Assembly (NCBI RefSeq): GCF_006345805.1
Contig: NC_043002.1
Location: 64,418,001 to 64,482,000 of the forward strand
DNA length: 64,000 nucleotides
Source of the DNA: Octopus sinensis
Taxonomy: Eukaryota
Direction of reading: 5' to 3'
Shown: in pieces, positions 10,451 to 64,000 of the stretch
Numbering within the stretch: position 1 is the stretch's first letter
Layout of the letters: each line of letters opens with the position of its first letter
The notes under the pieces: generated by a model
Told to the model about the DNA's origin: nothing
What the model saw: the letters and a program-made list of their open reading frames with translations, nothing else
Database searches by the model: none
Translations under genes and position numbers: made by a program

Positions 10451-11924
10451 TTTTTTTTTTCCTAGTTTCAACTCAGAGCTGCGGCCATGCTGATGCACCG
10501 CCGTCTTGTGCTACACTGTTATTACGACGAACCTCGTCTAATATGTGGCACTTGGTGAAGAATGGAGTTTGATATAGCTACTCTCATTTGCACCTCCTGC
10601 CGTGAGGTAGGTTCATCTGGGACTCTTGACAGGAAGATGTCCAGTTTTGATTTAAAAACCGCTACATCCACTTTGTGCAAGTTCCTCAGACTCTTTGGGA
10701 GAATATTAAAAAGCTGTGGGCCCTTGAAACCCAGGCTGTTGCAGAAGCTGGTCCTGAAGCGTGATGGCATTGCTGGGATCTTTGGCACTATGCAGTGTCG
10801 TCCCGTTCTAGCATTGGTGTAGCTTACAATGCCAAAATTTGGCACAATTCCTTCCAGGATCTTCCAGACATATTCTACTGCATACCTCTCCCGTCTTCTC
10901 TCTCCAGGGAGTAGAGTCTTAGCTGTTTTCAAACCTTTCCCAGTAGCTGAGCTGTTTGCAAAGAGATGATCTTCTTTGTGAATCTTCTCGGATTGCTTCA
11001 AGGTCCGCTGTTAATTTTACACTGGTGGGTGACCATAGCTGTGAGCAGTAATTCAGGCGACTGAGGACGAATGTCTGCCAGAGGACCATCATGGTTTCCT
11101 TATCTCTGGTTCTGAATGTTCTTAGGATCCACCCAGCCAGTCGTCTGCACTTTGTCGCCATTCTGGTAATGTGCACTCGGAAAGAGGTATCATCACTCAT
11201 GTCGATACCCAGGCCCCTCACAGACTTAGGCTCTGGGATTGAAATTCCCTGTGGACCGGTGTATCCTGTAAGTTTAATATTCAGTTTTGGATGCTGGTAG
11301 CGCAGGGCCTGGAACTTTTCAGCATTAAACTGCATATTATTATCCTCAGCTCATCTGTAGATTGAGTCCAACTCCTGCTGCAGGTGTGCAACATCGCTGG
11401 GGTTCTGTATTTTCTGCGAGACTTTCGTATCGTCTGCATAGCTGGCCAGAGTGGCTATCCGGGCACTTGAGGGTATATCTAAGAGGGCCACTATAAAAAG
11501 CAGTGGTCCAAAAACAGTACCCTGTGGAACACCGCTCACTATTTGTGTGTTCATAGAGGTGGCTTCATTAACCGCTACTGCCTGACTCCTATCTTTCAGG
11601 AAGTCATGCAACCACACTCCAAGGTTTCCAGCTATGCCGAGGTCACGTAGTTTGTGGCTTATCATACCATGATCCACCTTGTCAAAAGCTTTTGCAAAAT
11701 CAAGGTAGGTTACGTCCACATTTGATTTGTTGAGTAACTGCCTCAACACCCAGTCATAATGCTGTAAGAGCTGGGTCAGTCAGCTCCTACCTGGTCGGAA
11801 ACCATGCTGGGTATTACTCAGCAAGTTATTTTCCTCAAGGAATGCAATTAGTTTCTTTCTGACTATCCGTTCCATGACTTTGCTGATTTTGGCATCTGCT
11901 CTCCTCCCCCTTTATGTATTTGGC

Positions 11925-11970: not shown

Positions 11971-12279
11971 GGTTATCCGTAATAATTAAGGGTGAAATTA
12001 TTAATTTGGAAATATCAATTACACCAGTAAGTCTAATATCTAATCTTAGCTTTCCTTAGAACTTGATTTCGAAACGTACGTCGTGGATACTAAAAATGTA
12101 TGATAGATTGCAGTCAATTCATCTCTCTTACCTGTTTGTGTCTGCCTTCCAATGCTGTTTTACTAGATCTCCCTTTTTTGTAGAAGAAATAGCTATAACC
12201 CTTGACTGCTATTTCTAAATTCGGTATGTGGTAAGGCAACTCGTGCTAAAACCCTTATTGCTAGTATTGCCCTATATAT

Positions 12280-17380: not shown

Positions 17381-17438
<58 letters not shown>

Positions 17439-17465
17439 TGTGTGTGGTGTGTGGTGTGTGTGTGT

Positions 17466-17774
17466 GTTAACTGATGGTATTATTAAATTAATATCTAATT
17501 TTTCACCTCATTTATGAATATATATATATATATTATGTAATGTTGTAAACATGTGAGTCGTTTGCGATTTTATTCCATCCATTCGTTTATATTGGACTTT
17601 CCTCTGTCTCCTGTTTCTGAAAAGGATCCTTTCTCGAAAAGTAAAACCACCTATCATTCCTTCCCTGAGAATCTGTTAATTTGGTAATTATTTACATGCA
17701 CACGTCATCGCATTGTTGTTTGCTTTCTTATTCTATATATACATACTACATACGTATATATATATATATATATA

Positions 17775-17845
<71 letters not shown>

Positions 17846-18128
17846 AACTGATGGTATTATTAAATTATATCTAATTTTTCAACCTCATTTATGAATATAT
17901 ATATATATATATGTATGTATGTAAACATGTGAGTCGTTGGCGATTTTATTCCATCCATTCGTTTATATTGACTTTCCTCTGTCTCCTGTTTCTGAAAAGG
18001 ATCCTTTCTCGAAAAGTAAAACCACCTATCATTCCTTCCCTGAGAATCTGTTAATTTGGTAATTATTTACATGCACCACGTCATCGCATTGTTGTTTGCT
18101 TTCTTATTCTATATATACATAAACATAC

Positions 18129-18130
<2 letters not shown>
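17466..18130. repeat. Near-identical tandem duplication of a ~300-bp segment (~375-bp period including microsatellites)
   Basis: 17466-17755 matches 17843-18130 except for small indels. Confidence 0.9.
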
Positions 18131-18204
<74 letters not shown>

Positions 18205-18249
18205 ATGTTTGTTTGTGTGTGTGTGTGTGTGTGTCGGTATATGTATATA

Positions 18250-19080
18250 AGTGAGAACACACTCGTAGACAGACACTGCACAACTTTGCGTATAGATGAT
18301 AGGCTAAACCGTGCAAAAAGAATATATATGAAAATACTAACAGAGGTCAAAATTTACAAGACACTCACTCTAAATATATTACCATATATTTGCACGTACA
18401 ACCCCAGAAACACCAAAGTATATCGCACTGGTATCCTAAACCTTTCAATACTGCATGAGGACCCTAAGCTGTTCGGCAACGGAGACCGATGGAGTAGCGG
18501 TATCGGCAAAGGGAACCGTTAGAGTGAGTAATAAGGTTACAGAAAACAACTCCGGAGGTCTTATATATCTGTGAGTGTGTATATAAATATACTATATAAA
18601 TATGCTAAGCGACTTTCATTCTTGTTTTGAATCTGGCGGTACTAGCATTAGCGAACGTTACATTGAAGGAGTCATTCTAATGTTTTAGTACCTTCGGATT
18701 ATTGCAGAAAATCCATACTGAAGAGGAATGTGGTTAGTAAAGTTCATATTTTTGGATATTCTTTACTTAAATCCTGATTCCGAAACGCGCGTCTATGGAT
18801 AATCGGATATTGATAGATTTTCGTTACGTTACCCTCTGCCTGGATGAATAAGATTCAAGTATTATGGTTTCTCTGGTAGACCCTTTTTTAAGTAGAAGAA
18901 ATGGCTTAGATTTTGGCTGCTATTTCTAAACTTCGGTATGTGGTGAGGCATTTCTTTAGCTGACCCCTCAATATTAGTATTACTAGAATTTACCGTATAA
19001 CGGTCCTGTTTTCATACCGAATTCTACTTGGTGGAATTTATTGATTACTTCGTAATTAATTAGTTTTACCCTTAATTGCT
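18250..19080 (+). mobile_element. Truncated Penelope-like element (RT C-terminal/linker relic plus hammerhead-bearing terminal repeat)
   Basis: Translation ..RLNRAKRIYMKIL..NILPYICTYNPRN..NLSILHEDP resembles ..GVKRAKGIDIQRL..KILPYISTHNPSN..NLPILTAD of the PLE at 62525-63265. It is followed by an intact hammerhead. Confidence 0.75.
18711..18800 (+). ncRNA. Canonical type I hammerhead ribozyme in a Penelope-type terminal repeat
   Basis: ATCCATA-CTGAAGA-GGAAT...ATTCC-GAAA-CGCGCG-TC-TATGGAT. 7-bp stem I, G-C-closed 5-bp stem II extended by AGTAAAG/CTTTACT, palindromic stem III, GUC. Confidence 0.92.
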
Positions 19081-19084
19081 ATTG

Positions 19085-19289: not shown

Positions 19290-19300
<11 letters not shown>

Positions 19301-19420
19301 CCCATCATCGCTTGACAACCGATGTTGGTGTGTTTACGTTCTCGTCACTTAGTGGTTCGGCCAAAGTTACCGATGGAATAAGTTCTAGTTCGACGTTCCG
19401 ATATGGTCGCAGTCAAATAA
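19290..19420 (+). mobile_element. SINE family 1 tail fragment
   Basis: CCCATCATCGCTTGACAACCGATGTTGGTGTGTTTACG matches 57770-57830. Confidence 0.7.
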
Positions 19421-19452
19421 CTGAAGCAAATAATATAATATATGTATGTATG

Positions 19453-19490
<38 letters not shown>

Positions 19491-20275
19491 TCAATATAGG
19501 GAGGCAAAAAAATTTTGTAGAATTTTTTGCCCCCAGCGGCCTAGTGGGAAAAAATTAAATAGTCATAACCATTTTTGAGTTCAATATCACAATCAAGGAA
19601 CGGCCATAATAGGCCATTCACCACTAGAATAACAGCCAAAAGCTTCAACACAACCGCAAAATAACATTAATTCCGTAAATCAGGAGAAAATTAAAAAATT
19701 AAAAAACATTTACCCTGAAATTCTTATAGACGATGCACCGTTTCTTCTACTGTTTTATGTAAATAACCTGATTAAATTAAATCAAGCCAATCTACTGATG
19801 AATCTAAGGGCCTATGGTAGATTGGCTTGATTTAATTTAATCAGTTTAATTTACCATTAAACAGTAGAAGAAACGGTGCATCGTCTAAGGAATTTCAGGG
19901 TAAATGTTTTTTAATTTTCTCCTGATTTACGGAATTAATGTTATTTTGCGGTTGAAGCTTTTTGGCTGTTATTTCTAGTGGGTGAATGGCCTATTATGGC
20001 CGTTCCTTGATTGTGATATTGAACTTAAAAATGGTTTATGACTATTTAATTTTTTCCCACTAGGCGCTGGGGGCAAAAGAATTCTACAAAATTTTTTTGC
20101 CTCCCTATATTGATTAATTATGAATTTTCTGGTTGGTTCCGTAATGGAATCGGCGGCTTATATTTATTTGCTGCCGATAAATTTGGCGCGAGTGCGACGA
20201 TTTGAAAATTTTAGGTCAGATTTGGCGAGGCATGGACGAGAATGCCTCGTGAAAAAATTCTGTTCCGATTTGGCT

Positions 20276-20381
20276 ATTCCTTACTGATGAATCTAAGGGC
20301 CTATGGTAGATTGGCTTGATTTATTTAATCAGGTTAATTTACCATTAAACAGTAGAAGAAACGGTGCATCGTCTAAGGAAT
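20276..20381 (+). ncRNA. Type I hammerhead ribozyme, array copy 1
   Basis: ATTCCTTA-CTGATGA-[stem II]-GAAA-CGGTGCATCG-TC-TAAGGAAT. Perfect 8-bp stem I, near-palindromic stem III, predicted cleavage after 20373. Confidence 0.85.
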
Positions 20382-20765
20382 TTCAGGGTAAATGTTTTTT
20401 AATTTTCTCCTGATTTACGGAATTAATGTTATTTTGCGGTTGAAGCTTTTTGGCTGTTATTTCTAGTGGGTGAATGGCCTATTATGGCCGTTCCTTGATT
20501 GTGATATTGAACTTAAAAATGGTTTATGACTATTTAATTTTTTCCCACTAGGCCGCTGGGGGCAAAAGAATTCTACAAAATTTTTTTGCCTCCCTATATT
20601 GATTAATTATGAATTTTCTGGTTGGTTCCGTAATGGAATCGGCGGCTTATATTTATTTGCTGTCGATAAATTTGGCGCGAGTGCGACGATTTGAAAATTT
20701 TAGGTCAGATATTGGCGAGGCATGGACGAGAATGCCTCGTGAAAAATATCTGTTCCGATTTGGCT

Positions 20766-20871
20766 ATTCCTTACTGATGAATCTAAGGGCCTATGGTAGA
20801 TTGGCTTGATTTAATTTAATCAGGTTAATTTACCATTAAACAGTAGAAAAACGGTGCATCGTCTAAGGAAT
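20766..20871 (+). ncRNA. Type I hammerhead ribozyme, array copy 2 (variant at GAAA)
   Basis: Same motif, but reads TAGAAAAAC instead of TAGAAGAAAC: one G is missing, either a mutation or a sequencing error. Confidence 0.65.
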
Positions 20872-21254
20872 TTCAGGTAAATGTTTTTTAATTTTCTCCT
20901 GATTTACGGAATTAATGTTATTTTGTCGGTTGAAGCTTTTTGGCTGTTATTTCTAGTGGGTGAATGGCCTATTATGGCCGTTCCTTGATTGTGATATTGA
21001 ACTTAAAAATGGTTTATGACTATTTAATTTTTTCCCACTAGCCGCTGGGGGCAAAGAGAATTCTACAAAATTTTTTTGCCTCCCTATATTGATTAATTAT
21101 GAATTTTCTGGTTGGTTCCGTAATGGATCGGCGGCTTATATTTATTTGCTGCCGATAAATTTGGCGCGAGTGCGACGATTTGAAAATTTTAGGTCAGATA
21201 TTGGCGAGGCATGGACGAGAATGCCTCGTGAAAAATATCTGTTCCGATTTGGCT

Positions 21255-21359
21255 ATTCCTTACTGATGAATCTAAGGGCCTATGGTAGATTGGCTTGTTT
21301 AATTTAATCAGGTTAATTTACCATTAAAAGTAGAAGAAACGGTGCATCGTCTAAGGAAT
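21255..21359 (+). ncRNA. Type I hammerhead ribozyme, array copy 3
   Basis: Core CTGATGA at 21263-21269, GAAAC..GTC ending at 21351, stem I ATTCCTTA/TAAGGAAT. Small indels in stem II. Confidence 0.82.
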
Positions 21360-21745
21360 TTCAGGGTAAATGTTTTTTAATTTTCTCCTGATTTACGGAA
21401 TTAATGTTATTTTGCGGTTGAAGCTTTTTGGCTGTTATTTCTAGTGGGTGAATGGCCTATTATGGCCGTTCCTTGATTGTGATATTGAACTTAAAAATGG
21501 TTTATGACTATTTAATTTTTTCCCACTAGGCCGCTGGGGGCAAAAGAATTCTACAAAATTTTTTTGCCTCCCTATATTGATTAATTTAATGAATTTTCTG
21601 GTTGGTTCCGTAATGGAATCGGCGGCTTATATTTATTTGCTGCCGATAAATTTGGCGCGAGTGCGACGATTTGAAAATTTTAGGTCAGATATTGGCGAGG
21701 CATGGACGAGAATGCCTCGTGAAAAATATCTGTTCCGATTTGGCT

Positions 21746-21852
21746 ATTCCTTACTGATGAATCTAAGGGCCTATGGTAGATTGGCTTGATTTAATTTAAT
21801 CAGGTTAATTTACCATTAAACAGTAGAAGAAACGGTGCATCGTCTAAGGAAT
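21746..21852 (+). ncRNA. Type I hammerhead ribozyme, array copy 4
   Basis: CTGATGA at 21754-21760, GAAA at 21829-21832, GTC ending at 21844. Stem II contains a 19-bp hairpin ATGGTAGATTGGCTTGATT/AATCAGGTTAATTTACCAT. Confidence 0.85.
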
Positions 21853-22237
21853 TTCAGGGTAAATGTTTTTTATTTTCTCCTGATTTACGGAATTAATGTT
21901 ATTTTGCGGTTGAAGCTTTTTGGCTGTTATTTCTAGTGGGTGAATGGCCTATTATGGCCGTTCCTTGATTGTGATATTGAACTTAAAAATGGTTTATGAC
22001 TATTTAATTTTTTCCCACTAGGCCGCTGGGGGCAAAAGAATTCTACAAAATTTTTTTGCCTCCCTATATTGATTAATTATGAATTTTCTGTGGTTCCGTA
22101 ATGGAATCGGCGGCTTATATTTATTTGCTGCCGATAAATTTGGCGCGAGTGCGACGATTTGAAAATTTTAGGTCAGATATTGGCGAGGCATGAGTGGACG
22201 AGAATGCCTCGTGAAAAATATCTGTTCCGATTTGGCT

Positions 22238-22344
22238 ATTCCTTACTGATGAATCTAAGGGCCTATGGTAGATTGGCTTGATTTAATTTAATCAGGTTAA
22301 TTTACCATTAAACAGTAGAAGAAACGGTGCATCGTCTAAGGAAT
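22238..22344 (+). ncRNA. Type I hammerhead ribozyme, array copy 5
   Basis: CTGATGA at 22246-22252, GAAA at 22321-22324, GTC ending at 22336, perfect 8-bp stem I. Confidence 0.85.
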
Positions 22345-22726
22345 TTCAGGGTAAATGTTTTTTAATTTTCTCCTGATTTACGGAATTAATGTTATTTTGC
22401 GGTGAAGCTTTTTGGCTGTTATTTCTAGTGGGTGAATGGCCTATTATGGCCGTTCCTTGATTGTGATATTGAACTTAAAAATGGTTTATGACTATTTAAT
22501 TTTTCCCACTAGGCCGCTGGGGGCAAAAGAATTCTACAAAATTTTTTTGCCTCCCTATATTGATTAATTATGAATTTTCTGGTTGGTTCCGTAATGGAAT
22601 CGGCGGCTTATATTTATTTGCTGCCGATAAATTTGGCGCGAGTGCGACGATTTGAAAATTTTAGGTCAGATATTGGCGAGGCATGGACGAGAATGCCTCG
22701 TGAAAAATATCTGTTCCGATTTGGCT

Positions 22727-22832
22727 ATTCCTTACTGATGAATCTAAGGCCTATGGTAGATTGGCTTGATTTAATTTAATCAGGTTAATTTACCATTAAA
22801 CAGTAGAAGAAACGGTGCATCGTCTAAGGAAT
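22727..22832 (+). ncRNA. Type I hammerhead ribozyme, array copy 6
   Basis: CTGATGA at 22735-22741, GTC ending at 22824, perfect 8-bp stem I. Confidence 0.85.
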
Positions 22833-22951
22833 TTCAGGGTAAATGTTTTTTAATTTTCTCCTGATTTACGGAATTAATGTTATTTTGCGGTTGAAGCTTT
22901 TTGGCTGTTATTTCTAGTGGGTGAATGGCCTATTATGGCCGTTCCTTGATT

Positions 22952-22991
<40 letters not shown>

Positions 22992-23597
22992 TTATTTTAC
23001 TTGTTTCAGTTATATATATAAATACATATATAATAATATTTCTAAGTGTCTCTAAAGGGGAATACAGCAGCGGTACTAGATAGTAAGAGTTATATCTACG
23101 CTAACATGGTACTTGATAGTAGTGACGCCTGCTTGGTTCGGCTGCTCAACATTGTAAGGGACAAGTACCCTGAAACTAGTCTGTAGGTGCCAGACCAGCA
23201 AGGTGAAGCGACTGACCTCCCCTGTTCGGAGGTTAAAATGTGTTACAGTGCTAGCTAGAGACGATGGCCTCTTAGAGCTAATCAACGCCAGCATTCGTCC
23301 TATTTTTCTGGACTGCCATGTTTGCGTGGCGATAACTATATATATAGTTACAGGAGCTTAATACCTCTAAGGGATAACAAAATCCAAAGTCGCTTCTGGT
23401 TATTACCTGGGCAGGCACAGCCTTTTGTAAAGTTGCACGGTAGCAGATGGTTCGGTTGGTAAACCGTAGTTTAGATTATATGGGAGAAGAAAATGGATAT
23501 AATAACAATGGGGTCTCGTGGTTTTCGGTGGTATGACTTTAATACACACACAGACTCACACACACACACACAAATATGTATATGTATATATATATAT

Positions 23598-24589: not shown

Positions 24590-24775
24590 TTACTTGTTTC
24601 AGTCATTTGACTGGGGCCATGCTGGAGCACCGCTTTTAGTCGAGCAAATCGACCCCAGGACTTATTCTTTGTCAGCCTAGTACTTATTTTATCGGTTTCT
24701 TTTGCCGTACCGCTAAGTTACGGGACGTAAACACACACCATTCGGTTGTCAAGCGATGTCGGGGCAGGGGGGGAA
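24590..24775 (-). mobile_element. tRNA-derived SINE family 1, 3' part
   Basis: Reverse complement of the tail in 57720-57930. Also related to 19290-19420 and 5995-6175. Confidence 0.75.
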
Positions 24776-24959
24776 GCACAAACATGTACACACATACATG
24801 CATACGACAACCCATAGTTTCTACCCCTAAGGTATTTTGAAGGGATAATTTACGGATTCAATTGTCTATATAGGTTTAGCCTATGCTCACCGTCTTCCAC
24901 TATTTTGATGTCACCTGGTCAAAGGTGGAGGTAGGCGGCATTTGATAAATCTATGGGAG

Positions 24960-25022
24960 ATTGCGCTGATGAAAGACATGAAATATATTTTCATATTTCT
25001 AATCTAGAAACATGTTCGCAAT
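24960..25022 (+). ncRNA. Type I hammerhead ribozyme (GUU site) in a PLE-type repeat
   Basis: ATTGCG-CTGATGA-[AAGACATGAAA...TTTCAT...TCTA]-GAAA-CATG-TT-CGCAAT. 6-bp stem I, palindromic ACATGT stem III, non-canonical base of stem II. Confidence 0.72.
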
Positions 25023-25224
25023 TAACGGTTAGGCTATGTTTTCGTTATTTATTCCTTCTGTTTTGCATATGGGAATTGCAGGGTTATATCGTATGTGGAG
25101 CCCCACTTGTAGAAAATAGAAATAAACAGTCTCCGACTGCTATTTCTAATTTTTTCGGTATGCGGCTAAGCAGCCTGTGGCCTGTCCCTTCTATTTATAT
25201 ATATATATATATATATACATATAT

Positions 25225-33079: not shown

Positions 33080-35176
33080 CGAAACCAAACTTCCAAAACT
33101 CTATCGGCCTATAACCTGTTTATCCACCACGTATAAAATCCTAGCATCTATCCTGGCGGAGAAAATATATGTATTCATGGAGAAGAACGATATTTTCCCC
33201 ATTGAACAAAAAGGGTGCCGCCGAGGCTCATACGGATGCAAAGACCAACTGCTAATTAATCGTATGGTCCTTGAGAACTGTCACAACAAGCGCAGAGATC
33301 TCAGCTCCGCATGGATTGATTATAAAAAGGCCTTCGACAATATACCGCATCCATGGATCTTGAGATCACTGGACATCTTCAAAATTTCCCCTGTGATTTC
33401 AAGCTTCCTGAAGCATAATATGTCGTTGTGGAATACGAATCTCCAATTATACCACTCTAATGGAGTACTTGCCTCAGAAAATATAAACATCAACTGTGGC
33501 ATTTTTCAAGGTGACTCACTTTCACCTTTAATATTCTGCATAGCCCTAATACCCCTTACAGTGAATTAAACAGTACAGGGTATGGGTATAAAATTGTCAA
33601 TAAGAAAAATAAGCCATCTATTTTATATGGATGTCTTAAAACTCTATGGTAAAGACGATAATGAACTTGAAGGCCTATTGCGCACTGTGAAAGCATTCAG
33701 TGATGACATCGGGATGGAGTTTGGGCTTGAGAAGTGTGCCAAGGTCACTTTCCAGAAAGGGAAAGTGAAGACTACAAATTCAGTCGTGTTAGATGCTGAC
33801 ACAGTCATAAGAGAGCTTGAGCAAGAACAAACCTACAAATATTTAGGAATAAATGAAGGTTCTGGTATTCAGCATGCAACCATGAAAGAGAAGATCAGGA
33901 AGGAATGTTATAGGAGAGATCGAGCAATCCTGAAATCTGAACTAAATGCACGTAACAAGGTATTAGCTATAAATTCCTTAGCATTTCCAGATGTTACTTA
34001 TAGCTACAATGTGTTGAACTGGAATATGAGTGAAGTAAAGAAAATAGATAGAAAAATACGCAACTGTTGAGTTGTAATAGGATGCAACACCCAGAGGCAG
34101 ACGTAGGTCGCCTTTACTTCCCCAGAGCCCAAGAAGGTCGGGACCTGATACAATTTGAACTAGCTTACAAAACAACCACAATTGGACTGGCCAAATATCT
34201 TGAAATAACGAATGACTGGATGCTAAAGCTCGTGGAAAATCGCGAGAGACGAAAGAAGCTTCATTCTATCATAAAGGACAGCAAATGATTTGCTATTGAT
34301 CTCGTGCAGGATACCCAAACTGAACAACCCGAGGGAAGTACGGCAACTATTGTTGCAAAGAAGGTGAAAATAATGGCAACGAAAAAAGCGCCCGAGCAAT
34401 TGGCTGATAGGTGGGAGGAGAAACATCTGCACGGCAAATATGTAGCCCGTAACAAACAACCTGATGTTGACCAGAAGCAAACCCATCAGTGGCTAAGGAG
34501 CTCAAGGCTAAAAGCAGAGAGCGAAGGTTTCATCCTGGCTGCTCAAGATCAAAGCCTATTAACCCGGAACTACCAGGCCAATGTGATGAAAAATGGAGCA
34601 GACCCAAAATGCCGATTCTGCAACGACATGATTGAAACAGTGGACCACCTAATCTCTGGATGTAAAGTCTTAGCACCAGTGGAGTATAAATTAAGGCATG
34701 ACAGAGTTGGCCAATATCTACACTGGCTAATAAGTCGGCATTACAATATCAAAACTGCCGACAAGTGGTATAATCACCACCCTGAAGCTGTAACTGAAAG
34801 AGAAAATGTAACGATTCTGTGGGACTTTCCAGTACATACAGACCGAACCATCAAAGCCAATAAACCGGATATTGTTGTGAAAGACCAAAATAATAAAGTC
34901 TGCTTATTGATCGACATGAGCAAGAATTGCAAAAGATTGTCTTAACTGGTACATCACACGTATTGAGAAGAGCATTGTCGATGTGAGAACTATCACTATC
35001 CATGTATTTTAATTTAACTTTATTTCTATAAAAAAAAAAATTTTTTTCTGAAGGAACTAGTGAGTTTAGTTTAATGGCCTACCAATGATTACTATGAGTT
35101 TCTTTGCTCTAGGAGTCGGGAAGACACTCGGCAAGAAATGGAAGCAAATTTGAAAGAAGAAGAAAAACCCATGATG
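33080..35176 (+). mobile_element. Dong/R4-clade non-LTR retrotransposon (RT, CCHC, RLE), 5'-truncated, with an internal deletion in the endonuclease
   Basis: YRPITCL, EQKG, WIDYKKAFD, GIFQGDSLSP, YMDVLKLY, CRFC..HLISGC, RHDRV and KPDIVV motifs. The frame jumps from LIDMS to QELQKIVLTGTSHVLRRALSM*. (TAA)n on both flanks. Confidence 0.93.
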
Positions 35177-39841: not shown

Positions 39842-39956
39842 ATACAATAATAATAATAATAATAATAATAATAAAGGGGTAAAAAATTAATTAATTTTAC
39901 CGAGTATTGTTCAGTATGTAAAAATACCATTTACGGTATATTTGAAACATTACGTT

Positions 39957-40211
<255 letters not shown>

Positions 40212-40398
40212 CATACAAAATTAGAAAATGGAGAAACATACTTAAATATATCAAACATCAACCAACAGATGATACCCAATCAATACTTTATTACACCATT
40301 ACATAACAGTAAAGGCATTATACAAAATATATTGTAAATATAATTAGACAAGGAAATATAAATATAAAATATAAAATATAATATGTAATTATATCATA

Positions 40399-40509
40399 TC
40401 TGACAGCTGTTTCGGCAGTAAGGGCAATCATGCCTCATTTAACCTATAAGCCATATAAGGCAGGTATAAATGAGACATTAACAAGGATGCCCCACGGCCT
40501 CTTCAGAGA
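40399..40509 (-). ncRNA. Type I hammerhead ribozyme in a PLE-type repeat
   Basis: Minus strand TCT-CTGAAGA-GGC...GCC-GAAA-CAGCTG-TC-AGA. Long extended stem II containing CTCATTTA/TAAATGAG. Stem I is only 3 bp. Confidence 0.78.
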
Positions 40510-61675: not shown

Positions 61676-63327
61676 GTAGAAATATTTTTGAAAAAAATAT
61701 TAATACACGTGCAAATGTAAGGTTAAAATATAAAAAATCAACGAAAATGCATATTGTAGATATAAAAAGGCTATTTATGACAGGTAGTGACAAATATATA
61801 CATTTAGACTATTACTAGTCAAAAAGGTCATTGTTATTGATGATTATAAGAAGTTAATAATAATAATAATAATAAGGTAGGATACTGAAACGAACCAATT
61901 GGTTATCGCGTTAGCTATTCATCGTTTGAACAACACCGGTTAGTAAACGGTGTCAGGTCTAATAGTTCCTGAGAAAAGAGATTATTTGTAAGGGAGGTAA
62001 GTAGTTCTGGATTATATGCATAAGGGAGGCAAGTAGTTCAGGAATTAGAAATGTGAGTGATGAAGAAAGTGTATAGAGTTTAGTGGTTTAAATTGAAGAG
62101 TTAGTGGTGTTCTGTATTGAGTTGTGTGTTCACATTTAGTTGGGGGAGAAATTTGCTGATGAAAAATGACTTTTGTTGCATTGTGGTGTTCTGTGAGCAT
62201 TGGTAAAAGGGATATATTTGGAAATTGGGATTAAGATTCCTGGCACATCTTTCTATGTGTTCACTCACCCTTAACTGTCTGTATTGTGGGTGGCGGATTT
62301 GCTCTTTGTGAATGGTGATTCTTTGACGGAGTGAAATTCCTGTTTGTCCGATATATAGTTTACCGCATCCTATGCATGTCATGACATACATTACATTTGC
62401 CGAGGTGCAGGTGAAATTTGATTTGATCTTAAATATTTCTCCTTGTTTGAATTGGAATTCTGAACCCTCCAGAAGGTGGGGGCATGTTCCACAGTTGGAA
62501 CGTCCACATTTTGTCACTTTTGGCTCAGTAGTTAGTGGCTAAAGTCCAGCGCTGGTTAGTATTCTTTTCAGTGACTTCGGTTGTTTTTTTGCTTTTTATA
62601 ATGTTATATGAGCTTAAAATTTCGTTCATTGTTTTGTCTGCTGTGAGGATGGGGAGGTTTTGGGTGATGATGTTGAATGCTTCGTTATTGCTGGGGTTAT
62701 GTGTGGAGATGTACGGGAGTATTTTTAAGTCTTGTTTAGTATTACGGCTAGTTTTCCTTAATCTTTGTATATCTATTCCCTTAGCTCTTTTGACGCCTTC
62801 ATTTACTAATGAGATTGGGTAGTGTCTTTTAGTTAGTGTAGATCTAAGTTCAAGGAGTCTATGTTCACGAGTGTATGTATCGTAAACTATGGTGCAGATT
62901 CGTTTTGTTAGGTTAAAGGGTATGTTGATTTTTATGTGTTTGGGGTGGCAGGAGTTAAATAATAGGTATTGTTTAGAGTATGTGGGTTTATAAAAGATGT
63001 CTGTTTCTATATGGTTGTTAACTATTCTAATTAAGATGTCTAGAAAAGGTAGTTGCTTACTGTTGTGTTCCATAGTGAATTGTATATTGCTGCGTATGTT
63101 GTTGAGCATTCTTTTAAAATGAAGGAATTGATCCATGCTATCTTGACAAAGTATGAAGCAATCATCTAAATATCTCTTCCAGTTCTCCTTTAAGTAGTAA
63201 TTGAAAGAGGCGCCATATTTTTCTAGTGATGATTGGTATAACTTAAGTTCGTGGTAACCCTGCAATAACTGGAGCAGCTCTCAGGAACTATTATACCTGA
63301 CACCGTTTACTAACCGGCGTTGTTCAA
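61640..63327 (-). mobile_element. Penelope-like retroelement, 5'-truncated: RT (YLDD motif) plus GIY-YIG endonuclease, frameshifted
   Basis: ORF 62525-63265 has WKRYLDDCF and TDIFYKPT. ORF 62101-62517 has CGRSNCGTC and VMYVMTCIGCGKLYIGQT (GIY-YIG). A 49-bp inverted copy of 61926-61974 lies at 63279-63327. Confidence 0.93.
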
Positions 63328-63795
63328 TGTTGGAATCCGTGGAAATCTTCTACACTGGATTAAGTATTTCCTAGCGAATAGAACACAACATGTTGTAGTC
63401 GATGGAGTCCACTCAAACCCAGCAAAAGTCACCAGCGGGGTCAACCAGGGGACTGCCTTGGGCCCGCTCCTCTTTATAATTTACATAAACGACCTTTCCA
63501 GTGTTGTACATCAATGCAAAGTAAAAATATTTGGTGATGATACTAAGCTCCAGCAAATAATCAATGAAGAAGCAGACCGAGCTCAATTCCAGTCTGATCT
63601 ATATGTTGCGAGTCAATGGGCAGATAAAAACAAAATACAACTGAACGAGGGAAAATTTGATCTGATGCATTTTGGAAGAAAGTCCACACTAAAACAGCCA
63701 TTAACTCTTTCTCCAGGGGAACCGCTCACAGCCTCTAACAATATCAGAGACCTGGGCGTAATTGTTGATGACAATCTCAGTTGGAGTGCCCACAT

Positions 63796-63800
<5 letters not shown>
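63320..63800 (+). mobile_element. CR1/L2-like LINE reverse transcriptase fragment
   Basis: SGVNQGTALGPLLFIIYINDL and KIFGDDTKL motifs. Truncated on both sides and ends in (TA)n. Confidence 0.88.
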
Positions 63801-63858
<58 letters not shown>

Positions 63859-64000
63859 AGAGAGATAGATAGATCGATAGATATAATGTATTGTTCTGCG
63901 ATGGTTGTTCAACAAAAAAGTACTATATCTGGTGAGAAATAAATATTGTTTATAGACACAATCTATGTTTTTACGTGGTACTAATATTCTCTTGTGCTGA

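What the first reader, a model, noticed from the sequence alone, without database searches (positions are those of the whole stretch)
19484..22958. Hammerhead-ribozyme tandem array: candidate non-LTR retrozyme / circular RNA locus
Seen: a ~490-bp unit in ~6.5 direct copies. Each full copy has ATTCCTTA-CTGATGA-[long hairpin]-GAAA-CGGTGCATCG-TC-TAAGGAAT (copy 2 lacks the G of GAAA), a type I hammerhead with a perfect 8-bp stem I exactly flanking the core. Known: tandem type I hammerhead repeats in animals (non-LTR retrozymes, newt and cricket satellites) self-cleave into monomers that can circularise, and near-palindromic stem III works through dimeric hammerheads. Inference: a transcript would be cut about every 490 nt into monomers starting UAAGGAAU and ending ..CAUCGUC, giving a small non-coding self-cleaving mobile RNA. 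As I recall it, the unit is longer than typical animal non-LTR retrozymes. I cannot verify whether this family is already described in cephalopods.
Basis: partly seen in the sequence, partly recalled or inferred. Interest (0 to 1): 0.93.

Follow-up and report, generated by a model that had tools for sequence, protein, structure and literature searches.

The report
Hammerhead ribozyme tandem repeat, octopus-type genome
A 491-bp non-coding DNA unit, repeated about 6.5 times, carries a hammerhead self-cleaving RNA motif in each copy; it fits a known class of ribozyme-bearing mobile repeats ("non-LTR retrozymes") that depend on Penelope-like retrotransposons, so it is a good new example of a known class.

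Summary
A 488-493 bp unit is repeated 6.5 times at 19793-22958, 98% alike. Five of the six complete copies carry an intact type I hammerhead (HHR): 8-bp helix I, CUGAUGA, 68-nt helix II, GAAA, near-palindromic helix III, cut after C17. A descriptor for this architecture expects 0.02 chance hits per window.

- 19483-19795 is an inverted, 5'-truncated copy joined head-to-head inside helix II.
- The whole insert sits inside an (AT)n microsatellite. Together with the inverted copy and the tandem copies, this is the known integration signature of Penelope-like elements (PLEs).
- The 10.1/11.1 position is A·A rather than G-C, and no Rfam hammerhead model scores it.
- The window holds three more solo HHR elements and one truncated copy. 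All share a 14-nt box with the array unit, and their three helices differ by compensatory changes. One solo copy scores below threshold on Rfam Hammerhead_1.
- Relatives occur in Octopus vulgaris and O. sinensis loci, and a PLE RT/GIY-YIG remnant lies in the window.

Best reading: a PLE-dependent non-autonomous retrozyme array whose transcripts cleave through dimeric hammerheads. Cleavage and circular RNA are inferred, not shown. It is a new member of a known kind, and interest is moderate.

The parts
19433..19485 (.). (AT)n microsatellite, left flank of the insertion (target)
   Evidence: TRF; sequence
19483..19795 (-). Inverted, 5'-truncated copy of the unit (unit positions about 240 down to 1, plus the 3' half of the HHR). 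Its outer end ...GATTAATTAT abuts the (AT)n.
   Evidence: Inverted repeats; blastn 92% identity; alignment
19795..19885 (+). First direct partial unit: HHR core, helix II and helix III without the 5' strand of helix I. 19796-19815 is the 20-nt spacer of the large palindrome.
19886..22824 (+). Six full monomers defined by the predicted cut sites, starting at 19886, 20374, 20864, 21352, 21845 and 22337
22825..22958 (+). Last partial monomer (unit positions 1-134), ending ...GTGATAT at the (AT)n
20276..20381 (+). Hammerhead 1, intact; predicted cut after 20373
20766..20871 (+). Hammerhead 2, with AAAA in place of GAAA (G12 missing; possibly an assembly error)
21255..21359 (+). Hammerhead 3, intact core, two 1-nt deletions in helix II; cut after 21351
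21746..21852 (+). Hammerhead 4, identical to the consensus (107 nt); cut after 21844. MFE -35.7 kcal/mol, z = -4.85.
22238..22344 (+). Hammerhead 5, identical to the consensus; cut after 22336
22727..22832 (+). Hammerhead 6, intact core, 1-nt deletion in helix II; cut after 22824
20452..20465 (+). Conserved box GGCTGTTATTTCTA (unit positions 79-92), present in every direct copy and in all sister elements in the window
   Evidence: 11 matches against 0.13 expected; alignment
22955..22992 (.). (AT)n microsatellite, right flank
18711..19084 (+). Sister element e18. HHR at 18711-18800: ATCCATA CTGAAGA GGAAT..ATTCC GAAA CGCGCG TC|TATGGAT. 3' part runs to the (AT)n and contains the box at 18915-18928.
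   Evidence: Rfam Hammerhead_1 23.4 bits, E = 8e-4
24959..25023 (+). Sister HHR e24: GATTGCG CTGATGA a AGA..TCT a GAAA CATG TT|CGCAATT, with the same A/A offset as the array. Box at 25135-25148.
40399..40509 (-). Sister HHR e40: TCT CTGAAGA GGC..(86-nt helix II)..GCC GAAA CAGCTG TC|AGA. Box at 40007-40020, 3' end near 39875.
11971..12272 (+). 5'-truncated sister copy e12 (...ATTTC GAAA CGTACG TC|GTGGATA), lying between two microsatellites. About 40 nt at its 5' side look like an inverted copy of the element's 3' end.
62101..63265 (-). Remnant of a Penelope-like element: C-terminal part of the RT (YLDD) and a CCHH + GIY-YIG endonuclease. This is the kind of autonomous partner such repeats would need.
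   Evidence: (PF01541, E = 1.3e-5)

Best explanation
The locus is one insertion of a non-autonomous, non-coding retroelement of the hammerhead-bearing, Penelope-like-element (PLE)-dependent kind, called a 'non-LTR retrozyme' in animals. It sits in an (AT)n microsatellite of an octopod-type genome.

Shown here:
- A 491-bp unit in 6.5 head-to-tail copies, preceded by an inverted 5'-truncated copy.
- Each complete unit encodes, on the + strand only, a type I hammerhead with all core nucleotides: CUGAUGA, GAAA, A15.1-U16.1 and C17.
- That hammerhead has an 8-bp helix I, a long helix II, and a helix III that is stable only as a 12-bp duplex between two hammerheads.
- The + strand RNA is far more structured than shuffled sequence.
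- Sister elements with compensatory helix changes, and a PLE remnant, lie in the same window.

Inferred:
- A read-through + strand transcript pairs neighbouring hammerheads through helix III.
- It then cuts after ...CAUCGUC, releasing 488-493-nt monomers with 5'-OH and 2',3'-cyclic phosphate ends.
- Helix I (UAAGGAAU pairing with AUUCCUUA) holds the ends together for ligation by a host RtcB-type ligase.
- The circle resists re-cleavage because a single helix III is unstable.
- A PLE reverse transcriptase / GIY-YIG endonuclease copies the multimeric or circular RNA into nicked microsatellite DNA, producing tandem and inverted copies.
For: - Tandem array. Monomer boundaries and 98-100% identity.
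- HHR motif: 5 hits against 0.02 expected. With a second descriptor, 0 of 200 shuffles gave a hit with helix I of at least 3 bp.
- Fold: the HHR-constrained fold is -32.7 against an MFE of -35.7 kcal/mol. Helix III is -0.9 as a hairpin and -17.5 to -18.9 kcal/mol as a dimer. HHR z = -4.85.
- Whole monomer: circular + strand -156 kcal/mol, z = -7.4; minus strand -108 kcal/mol. GC 36.7%.
- Non-coding: no ORF longer than 72 aa, and frames are broken between copies. A six-frame protein query found nothing.
- Integration signature: inverted truncated copy plus microsatellite flanks, matching the PLE signature described in PMC8557442.
- Sister elements: four other HHR loci in the window have covarying helices I, II and III and share the box GRCTGYTATTTCTA. 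One of them matches Rfam Hammerhead_1 across the full model (23.4 bits).
- Related PLEs: pLTR HHRs of PLEs in Argonauta hians and two ENA assemblies have palindromic helix III, and two of the three have a 1x1 mismatch next to the core.
- Cross-species: family copies in O. vulgaris (79% over 280 nt) and an HHR in O. sinensis.
- Autonomous partner: a PLE GIY-YIG/RT remnant in the window.
- Literature: the class is described in PMC7229834 and preprint 10.64898/2026.07.22.740005.
Against: - Positions 10.1/11.1 are A·A instead of the highly conserved G-C pair (PMC4209133).
- No Rfam hammerhead model scores the array motif even at E <= 10.
- Helix I is an unbroken 8-bp helix with no loop or bulge for the loop-loop contacts that make natural type I HHRs fast, so activity could be very low. 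PLE hammerheads cleave poorly in vitro (PMC4209133).
- One of the six hammerheads lacks G12.
- No transcript, promoter or circular RNA evidence is available.
- No second genomic locus of this exact 491-bp family was found in about 150 kb of octopod DNA sampled.
- No sequence homology of the unit to a PLE pLTR was found; only the architecture matches.
- The inverted copy is more diverged (about 12 events in 313 nt) than the direct copies are from each other, which a single integration event does not explain.
Confidence: 0.72

Rival explanations
1. Dead relic or satellite. The unit descends from a hammerhead-bearing PLE-type element, but its ribozyme no longer cleaves (A·A at 10.1/11.1, oversized helix II). 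The array grew by unequal crossing-over or replication slippage, with no RNA-based function or mobility.
For: No Rfam hammerhead hit. Non-canonical 10.1/11.1. The direct copies are far more alike than the inverted copy is to them, as expected from local DNA-level homogenisation. No other locus of the exact family was found. The satellite-expansion model for such repeats is discussed in preprint 10.64898/2026.07.22.740005.
Against: All 11 core nucleotides, the perfect 8-bp helix I and the 12-bp dimeric helix III are intact in 5 of 6 copies. The same A/A arrangement recurs in an independent element (e24). U/U occurs in HHRs flanking or next to PLE ORFs in L002 and L001, and A/G in an O. sinensis HHR. 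This suggests the mismatch is tolerated. Hammerheads with no helix II at all (minizymes) can still cleave (PMC544870). RNA structure is strand-specific, relying on G·U pairs (z = -7.4 on +), which argues for recent selection at the RNA level.
Confidence: 0.2
2. Internally deleted PLE. The repeats are simply tandem pseudo-LTRs of a Penelope-like element that lost its ORF, produced by the ordinary PLE integration mechanism (template jumps). No circular RNA stage is involved and it is not a separate retrozyme lineage.
For: Partial tandems, an inverted 5'-truncated upstream copy and a microsatellite target are general PLE features (PMC8557442). Sister elements have a common 3' end (...TTTTACCCTTAATTG...) about 190-410 nt past the cut site, and variable 5' truncation. 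That suggests linear RNA templates with a defined 3' end rather than HHR-cut monomers.
Against: 6.5 copies is more than the usual 1.x tandem of a PLE. No similarity of the unit to the PLE remnant in the window or to five sampled PLE loci. In the literature, retrozymes are themselves regarded as pLTR derivatives, so this rival differs from the best explanation only in the circular RNA step.
Confidence: 0.06
3. Assembly artefact or chance motif. The copy number is inflated by misassembly, or the hammerhead-like pattern is coincidental.
For: Differences between copies are mostly 1-nt indels typical of long-read error. PLE tandem/inverted structures are known to trouble assemblies (PMC8557442).
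Against: The chance expectation for the motif is 0.02 per window. Copies carry distinct indels and are bounded by unique junctions (inverted copy on the left, (AT)n on both sides). Four related HHR elements elsewhere in the window argue against coincidence.
Confidence: 0.02

Closest known systems
Animal non-LTR retrozymes (Cervera & de la Pena 2020, PMC7229834; Li, Clavereau & Pollet 2026 preprint 10.64898/2026.07.22.740005)
   Same: Head-to-tail repeats of a few hundred bp. One type I hammerhead per unit. Low GC (36.7%). Non-coding. RNA predicted to be highly self-paired. Short palindromic helix III implying dimeric cleavage, as in axolotl. Co-occurrence with PLEs.
   Different: Helix II is 68 nt, against about 4 bp in canonical metazoan HHRs. 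10.1/11.1 is A·A. No loop 1 / loop 2 contacts are possible. At 491 bp the unit is above the 150-450 bp range first reported, though inside the 51-972 bp range of the 2026 survey. An inverted truncated copy caps the array. No expression data. I found no description of the class in cephalopods in the searched literature.
Hammerheads in pseudo-LTRs of Penelope-like elements (Cervera & de la Pena 2014, PMC4209133; Craig et al. 2021, PMC8557442)
   Same: Type I, palindromic helix III, an extra nucleotide after A9, longer helix II, and a tandem/inverted insertion structure with a microsatellite target. Relatives of the window's PLE in L001, L002 and L005 have HHRs within 75-1400 nt of the ORF end.
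   Different: No RT/EN ORF between the repeats. Helix I is much longer (8 bp against 3-5). The published min-HHRs keep G10.1-C11.1. No nucleotide homology between the unit and any sampled pLTR.
Hammerhead satellites: newt satellite 2, Schistosoma Sm-alpha SINE-like elements, Dolichopoda pDo500 (about 500 bp; PMC2837043)
   Same: Tandem or dispersed non-coding repeats with a type I HHR that works as a dimer. pDo500 has nearly the same unit length. The solo sister copies here, with a shared 3' end and variable 5' truncation, behave like SINEs, as Sm-alpha does.
   Different: No sequence similarity. No tRNA-like Pol III promoter was detected. Helix II is enlarged.
Rfam RF00163 Hammerhead_1
   Same: The neighbouring element e18 aligns to the full model: AUCCA-CUGAAGAG...CGAAACGCGCGUC-UGGAU, 23.4 bits, E = 8e-4.
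   Different: The array motif itself gets no score at E <= 10. e18 is below the 34-bit gathering threshold because of a 55-nt insertion in helix II.

Membership tests
Hammerhead ribozyme, type I | Conserved core C3-U4-G5-A6-N7-G8-A9, G12-A13-A14, A15.1-U16.1, and H17 at the cut site | tested here: met
   CUGAUGA ... GAAA ... U-C present in 5 of 6 complete copies; copy 2 lacks G12.
Hammerhead ribozyme, type I | Three helices around the core, with helix I open (5' and 3' ends in helix I) | tested here: met
   Helix I is 8 bp perfect. Helix II is 4 bp, then an internal loop, then a 19-bp hairpin. Helix III is 4 bp as a hairpin or 12 bp as a dimer. The constrained fold is -32.7 against an MFE of -35.7 kcal/mol. 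Helices covary among five loci in the window.
Hammerhead ribozyme, type I | G10.1-C11.1 pair closing helix II | tested here: not met
   A·A in the array and in e24. G-C in e18 and e40. U/U in the L001 and L002 HHRs, and A/G in the O. sinensis HHR.
Hammerhead ribozyme, type I | Score at or above the Rfam gathering threshold for a hammerhead model | tested here: not met
   No hammerhead hit at gathering threshold or at E <= 10 for the array. Sister e18 scores 23.4 bits against a 34-bit gathering threshold.
Hammerhead ribozyme, type I | Site-specific self-cleavage | not testable with these tools
   Needs in vitro transcription of monomer and dimer constructs.
Animal non-LTR retrozyme | Tandem repeat detected by TRF, with at least two consecutive units holding a complete type I HHR of MFE below -5 kcal/mol (operational definition in preprint 10.64898/2026.07.22.740005) | tested here: met
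   TRF 6.5 copies. Consecutive complete HHRs at 21255-22832. MFE -35.7 kcal/mol. Caveat: whether the authors' RNAbob descriptors accept A·A at 10.1/11.1 is unknown.
Animal non-LTR retrozyme | Non-coding, low GC, no LTRs | tested here: met
   Longest ORF is 72 aa and not conserved between copies. No protein homologues of any frame. GC 36.7%. PBS/PPT motifs were not searched formally.
Animal non-LTR retrozyme | Monomer RNA highly self-paired | tested here: met
   Circular fold -156 kcal/mol, z = -7.4, 59% paired.
Animal non-LTR retrozyme | Expressed as linear and circular monomer RNA | not testable with these tools
   No transcriptome data available.
Animal non-LTR retrozyme | Multiple copies or loci in the genome (mobility) | tested here: inconclusive
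   This exact unit occurs only in this array within the window, and is absent from about 150 kb of octopod loci, one metagenome scan and one viral-contig scan. Related families are dispersed: four loci in the window, plus one O. vulgaris and one O. sinensis locus.
Penelope-like element (as non-autonomous derivative) | PLE-type insertion structure: tandem copies, inverted 5'-truncated upstream copy, microsatellite target | tested here: met
   criteria from PMC8557442.
Penelope-like element (as non-autonomous derivative) | Nucleotide homology of the unit to the pLTR of an autonomous PLE of the same genome | tested here: inconclusive
   No similarity to the PLE remnant at 61.9-63.3 kb or to PLE loci L001, L002 and L004-L008. 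Only architecture and a loosely similar 3'-terminal motif match. The genome itself could not be searched.
Penelope-like element (autonomous) | RT + GIY-YIG ORF between the repeats | tested here: not met
   No such ORF in the unit. A separate PLE remnant lies at 62101-63265.

The most novel reading that the evidence does not exclude
Octopods may carry a lineage-specific superfamily of hammerhead elements. Its features would be a greatly enlarged helix II (34-86 nt), often a non-Watson-Crick 1x1 pair at 10.1/11.1, and a shared 14-nt box. Standard hammerhead models (Rfam) largely miss these elements. This array would be an active member producing abundant 490-nt circular RNAs through dimeric cleavage. 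If so, hammerhead and retrozyme content in cephalopod genomes is underestimated. The G10.1-C11.1 rule would be dispensable in vivo. The long, G·U-rich hairpins and the 300-bp inverted repeat would be candidate double-stranded RNA substrates in a clade known for heavy RNA editing; that last link is my speculation.
Probability: 0.3. Interest if true: 0.55.

Novelty: new member of a known kind. Interest (0 to 1): 0.4.

Why it matters
Non-LTR retrozymes have been characterised experimentally in a coral, a mussel and an axolotl, and surveyed mainly in vertebrates. In the searched literature, cephalopods appear only as a count of 235 Rfam Hammerhead_1 hits in the giant squid genome (PMC6962438).

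This locus gives three things:
- A clean, young, testable array from an octopod-type genome.
- Evidence that related elements cluster in microsatellite-rich DNA next to PLE remnants, with the PLE integration signature. This supports the proposal that retrozymes are non-autonomous PLE derivatives, and extends it outside vertebrates.
- Natural hammerheads that lack the G10.1-C11.1 pair and carry very large helix II insertions. These are invisible to Rfam at its thresholds, and they offer a direct test of how much of helix II the ribozyme needs in vivo.

It does not open a new category.

Tried and rejected
- Rfam. The whole window at gathering threshold gave nothing. The array at E <= 10 gave only weak miRNA/sRNA hits, caused by the big palindrome centre and the helix II hairpin. 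I reject these as artefacts, since the scores are far below the gathering thresholds.
- Coding potential. ORFs in the unit are at most 72 aa and frame-broken. The 66-aa ORF and the GIY-YIG ORF are not on record as called genes. A 987-aa six-frame query of the unit found no protein.
- Other copies of the unit. The metagenome scan with a 20-mer returned one GC-rich bacterial contig (L003) that shares only the 20-mer, which is a chance match. The viral-contig scan with a 24-mer found nothing. blastn against eight fetched loci found nothing for the array unit.
- Species identification. A LINE ORF hit only about 60-67% relatives in many marine invertebrates, which is uninformative. The octopod assignment rests on two things: PLE protein best hits (Octopus, Argonauta; 49-78%), and a SINE plus a family-B element shared with an O. 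vulgaris locus.
- tRNA-like promoter. ARAGORN found nothing in 11-26 kb.
- Alternative core registers that would restore a G-C at 10.1/11.1. None exists in the sequence.
- Second hammerhead on the minus strand of the unit (viroid-like). None found.
- Lünse et al. 2017 (PMC5785218), which may describe similar variants, is not held in the library.


Full report
OBSERVATION

Tandem Repeats Finder reports one array at 19793-22958 with period 488, 6.5 copies, 98% matches and score 6127.
- Cutting at the predicted hammerhead site (...CATCGTC|TAAGGAAT) gives six full monomers of 488-493 bp, starting at 19886, 20374, 20864, 21352, 21845 and 22337, plus a 134-bp partial copy ending at 22958.
- The majority consensus is 491 bp. 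Each copy differs from it by 2-7 events, almost all of them 1-nt indels. That pattern looks like long-read assembly noise rather than divergence.
- Six complete motifs ATTCCTTA-CTGATGA-(68 nt)-GAAA-CGGTGCATCG-TC-TAAGGAAT are present.

The first 310 bp of its interval (19483-19795) is an inverted, 5'-truncated copy of the unit. It is about 92% identical to the direct copies and is joined head-to-head to the first direct copy inside helix II of the ribozyme, leaving a 20-nt spacer.

IS THE HAMMERHEAD MORE THAN CHANCE?

I wrote a generic type I descriptor: CTGATGA; a perfect helix I of at least 5 bp immediately flanking; GAAA; helix III of at least 3 bp closed by A15.1-U16.1; then H17.
- It finds the five intact array copies and one further site at 24966, against 0.02 hits per dinucleotide-shuffled window on both strands.
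- A second descriptor modelled on PLE "minimal" hammerheads used CTGANGA, helix II of at least 3 bp with 0 or 1 unpaired nucleotides next to the core, GAAA, a 2-10-nt palindrome and U-H. It finds four independent loci in the window: 18718(+), the array, 24966(+) and 40506(-).
- Shuffles give 0.075 hits per window for this second descriptor, and none in 200 shuffles once helix I of at least 3 bp is required.

ANATOMY OF THE ARRAY RIBOZYME

- Helix I is 8 perfect base pairs.
- The core has CUGAUGA, GAAA, A15.1-U16.1 and C17.
- Helix II is 68 nt: UCUA/UAGA, an internal loop, then a 19-bp hairpin rich in G·U pairs.
- Helix III is ACGG-UGCA-UCGU.
- As a hairpin helix III is worth only -0.9 kcal/mol. 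Two copies form a 12-bp duplex of -17.5 to -18.9 kcal/mol. This is the classical dimeric arrangement of newt, axolotl, Schistosoma and PLE hammerheads (PMC4209133, PMC7229834).
- The fold constrained to the hammerhead shape is within 3 kcal/mol of the MFE (-32.7 against -35.7; z = -4.85).

Two features are non-canonical.
- The pair next to the core (10.1/11.1) is A·A instead of the highly conserved G-C.
- Helix I has no loop or bulge that could contact loop 2.

No Rfam hammerhead model scores the motif, at gathering threshold or at E <= 10, even when only 141 nt are searched.

THE REST OF THE UNIT

- It has no ORF longer than 72 aa. Frames are broken between copies, and a six-frame query finds no protein in 5.8 billion.
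- GC content is 36.7%.
- The circular + strand monomer folds to -156 kcal/mol (z = -7.4, 59% paired). The minus strand reaches only -108 kcal/mol.
- This difference comes from G·U pairs, which indicates that the + strand RNA is the selected molecule.

SURROUNDINGS

The insert is bounded on both sides by (AT)n (19433-19485 and 22955-22992). Tandem copies, an inverted 5'-truncated copy at the upstream side and a microsatellite target together are the integration signature described for Penelope-like elements (PMC8557442).

The window also contains a 5'-truncated PLE on the minus strand at 62101-63265. It has an RT C-terminal part with YLDD and a CCHH + GIY-YIG endonuclease (Pfam PF01541, E = 1.3e-5). 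Its best named relatives are Octopus vulgaris, Argonauta hians, O. bimaculoides and O. sinensis proteins, at 49-78% identity.

SISTER ELEMENTS IN THE WINDOW

- e18 (HHR 18711-18800): ATCCATA CUGAAGA GGAAU...AUUCC GAAA CGCGCG UC|UAUGGAU.
- e24 (24959-25023): GAUUGCG CUGAUGA a AGA...UCU a GAAA CAUG UU|CGCAAUU.
- e40 (40509-40399, minus strand): UCU CUGAAGA GGC...GCC GAAA CAGCUG UC|AGA.
- e12 (11971-12272): a 5'-truncated copy keeping ...AUUUC GAAA CGUACG UC|GUGGAUA.

All three helices differ between loci by compensatory changes, while the core is constant. All have large helix II insertions (34-86 nt) and palindromic helix III.

e18 aligns to Rfam Hammerhead_1 over the whole model (23.4 bits, E = 8e-4). 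It falls below the 34-bit threshold because of a 55-nt insertion.

e24 has the same A/A arrangement as the array.

All four, and every direct copy of the array unit, carry the box GRCTGYTATTTCTA on the hammerhead strand, downstream of the cut site. That is 11 matches against 0.13 expected.

e12, e18 and e40 abut microsatellites on both sides; for e24 only a (TA)n run 3' of the cut site was noted. e12, e18 and e40 have similar 3' termini (...TTTTACCCTTAATTG...) with variable 5' truncation.

OUTSIDE THE WINDOW

Loci fetched through the PLE protein hits show the following.
- Hammerheads lie 75-1400 nt downstream of PLE ORFs in Argonauta hians (L001) and two ENA assemblies (L002, L005).
- In L002 the HHR is repeated 3.7 kb upstream, as expected for pseudo-LTRs.
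- All three have 4-nt palindromic helix III, and L001 and L002 have a U/U 1x1 mismatch at 10.1/11.1.
- An O. sinensis locus (L006) has CGUCU CUGAUGA a GGGAU...AUCCC g GAAA CAGCUG UA|AGACG, with an inverted copy of the motif about 130 nt upstream.
- An O. vulgaris locus (L004) has a 5'-truncated family-B copy (79% over 280 nt to e40, E = 1e-57) between two (AT)n tracts, with the same 3' end. Next to it lies the same SINE that occurs in the window.

The superfamily is therefore shared among octopods, and the mismatch next to the core is recurrent rather than a lesion private to this array.

The exact 491-bp unit was not found anywhere else. Sources searched were about 150 kb of octopod loci, one metagenome scan whose single hit was a chance 20-mer in a bacterial contig, and one viral-contig scan. 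No cephalopod genome could be searched as a whole.

MECHANISM

Shown: the sequence anatomy, the strand-specific structure, the dimer-only stability of helix III, the PLE-type insertion structure, and the family relationships.

Inferred from the published behaviour of the class (PMC7229834, PMC4209133, PMC6765202):
- Read-through + strand transcripts pair adjacent hammerheads through helix III.
- They cut after C17, releasing monomers of about 490 nt.
- The monomer ends are held together by helix I and joined by an RtcB-type ligase.
- The circle is protected from re-cleavage because a lone helix III is unstable.
- A PLE RT/EN copies multimeric or circular RNA into nicked microsatellite DNA.

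The main reasons for doubt are the A·A at 10.1/11.1, the absence of tertiary loop contacts, and the generally poor in vitro activity of PLE-type hammerheads. Against a strict requirement for helix II, minizymes lacking it altogether still cleave (PMC544870).

One fact remains unexplained: the inverted copy carries about 12 events in 313 nt, including 8-nt and 4-nt insertions, whereas the direct copies are nearly identical to each other. Possible causes are post-insertion homogenisation or expansion of the direct copies, a second template RNA, or two separate events.

COMPARISON AND NOVELTY

The locus meets the operational definition of an "active non-LTR retrozyme": a TRF tandem repeat with at least two consecutive units holding a complete type I HHR of MFE below -5 kcal/mol (preprint 10.64898/2026.07.22.740005). 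It also meets the descriptive features in PMC7229834.

Its length is unremarkable. The reported range is 51-972 bp, and the cricket pDo500 satellite is about 500 bp (PMC2837043).

It fails two hammerhead family criteria, the G10.1-C11.1 pair and an Rfam score, so I file it as a hammerhead variant by architecture and by kinship with e18, not by model score.

In the searched literature I found no description of retrozymes or PLE hammerheads in cephalopods. The only mention is a count of 235 Rfam Hammerhead_1 loci in the giant squid (PMC6962438).

Verdict: a new member of a known kind, real and well preserved, moderately interesting (0.4). If cleavage and circles are demonstrated, it has modest added value as a natural test of the helix II rules.

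Noticed in passing
window 18711-19084 (+): Solo hammerhead element e18, only about 400 bp upstream of the array. It matches Rfam Hammerhead_1 over the full model (23.4 bits, below the 34-bit threshold) with a 55-nt insertion in helix II. Its 3' part ends at an (AT)n tract.
   Followed up: yes
window 24959-25023 (+): Solo hammerhead e24 with the same A/A offset next to the core as the array motif, helix III ACAUGU and U17. Rfam does not score it as a hammerhead.
   Followed up: yes
window 39875-40509 (-): Element e40: a hammerhead with an 86-nt helix II. Downstream lies a long hairpin (about 40100-39985) whose 3' arm contains the conserved box. An (AT)n microsatellite has expanded inside the element (40102-40215).
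   Followed up: partly
window 11971-12272 (+): 5'-truncated sister copy e12, between two microsatellites. Its first 40 nt or so look like an inverted copy of the element's own 3' end, reminiscent of the 30-40-bp 'tail' described for PLE insertions.
   Followed up: partly
window 61880-61930 (-): Just 3' of the PLE GIY-YIG ORF there is a decayed hammerhead-like motif: aCGATGA a TAGC..GCGA, GATA in place of GAAA, a 10-nt perfect palindrome ACCAATTGGT, then TC. It is followed by a 3' end ...CCTACCTTATTATT that loosely resembles the 3' ends of the solo elements.
   Followed up: partly
window 13699 (-): CTGATGA a GAGC gctg GCTC GAAA c... This is a possible minimal PLE-type hammerhead with G10.1-C11.1 and the bulged nucleotide, but without a recognisable helix I or palindromic helix III. 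It may be chance.
   Followed up: no
window 10522-11749 (-), 33177-34945 (+), 63320-63859 (+): Fragments of non-LTR (LINE) reverse transcriptase ORFs (Pfam RVT_1, zf-RVT). The 34304-34945 ORF has 60-67% relatives in many marine invertebrates (Clytia, Penaeus).
   Followed up: partly
window 19300-19430 and 24700-24760; L004 2740-2900: Fragments of one SINE-like repeat in opposite orientations on either side of the array. The same repeat occurs in the Octopus vulgaris locus L004, supporting an octopod origin for the window.
   Followed up: partly
window 17381-18220: A 375-bp unit in 2.2 copies (94%), made of (TA)n(TG)n plus about 250 bp of unique sequence. It has no hammerhead core (CTGATGG) and its nature is unknown.
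   Followed up: no
window 19483-20125: The inverted copy and the first direct copy form an imperfect palindrome of about 310 bp per arm with a 20-nt spacer. A transcript through it would form a long double-stranded hairpin. The weak Rfam miRNA hits at 19771-19841 are by-products of this.
   Followed up: partly
L006 18160-18370 (-), Octopus sinensis: A hammerhead with an A/G offset at 10.1/11.1 and helix III CAGCUG (the same as e40), plus a diverged inverted copy of the motif about 130 nt upstream. This is the same head-to-head pattern as at the array's left end.
   Followed up: partly
L001 6205 (-) and 12487 (+), Argonauta hians: The PLE locus contains the same hammerhead-bearing segment twice, in inverted orientation around the ORF. 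This is another example of the complex inverted PLE insertion structure.
   Followed up: no
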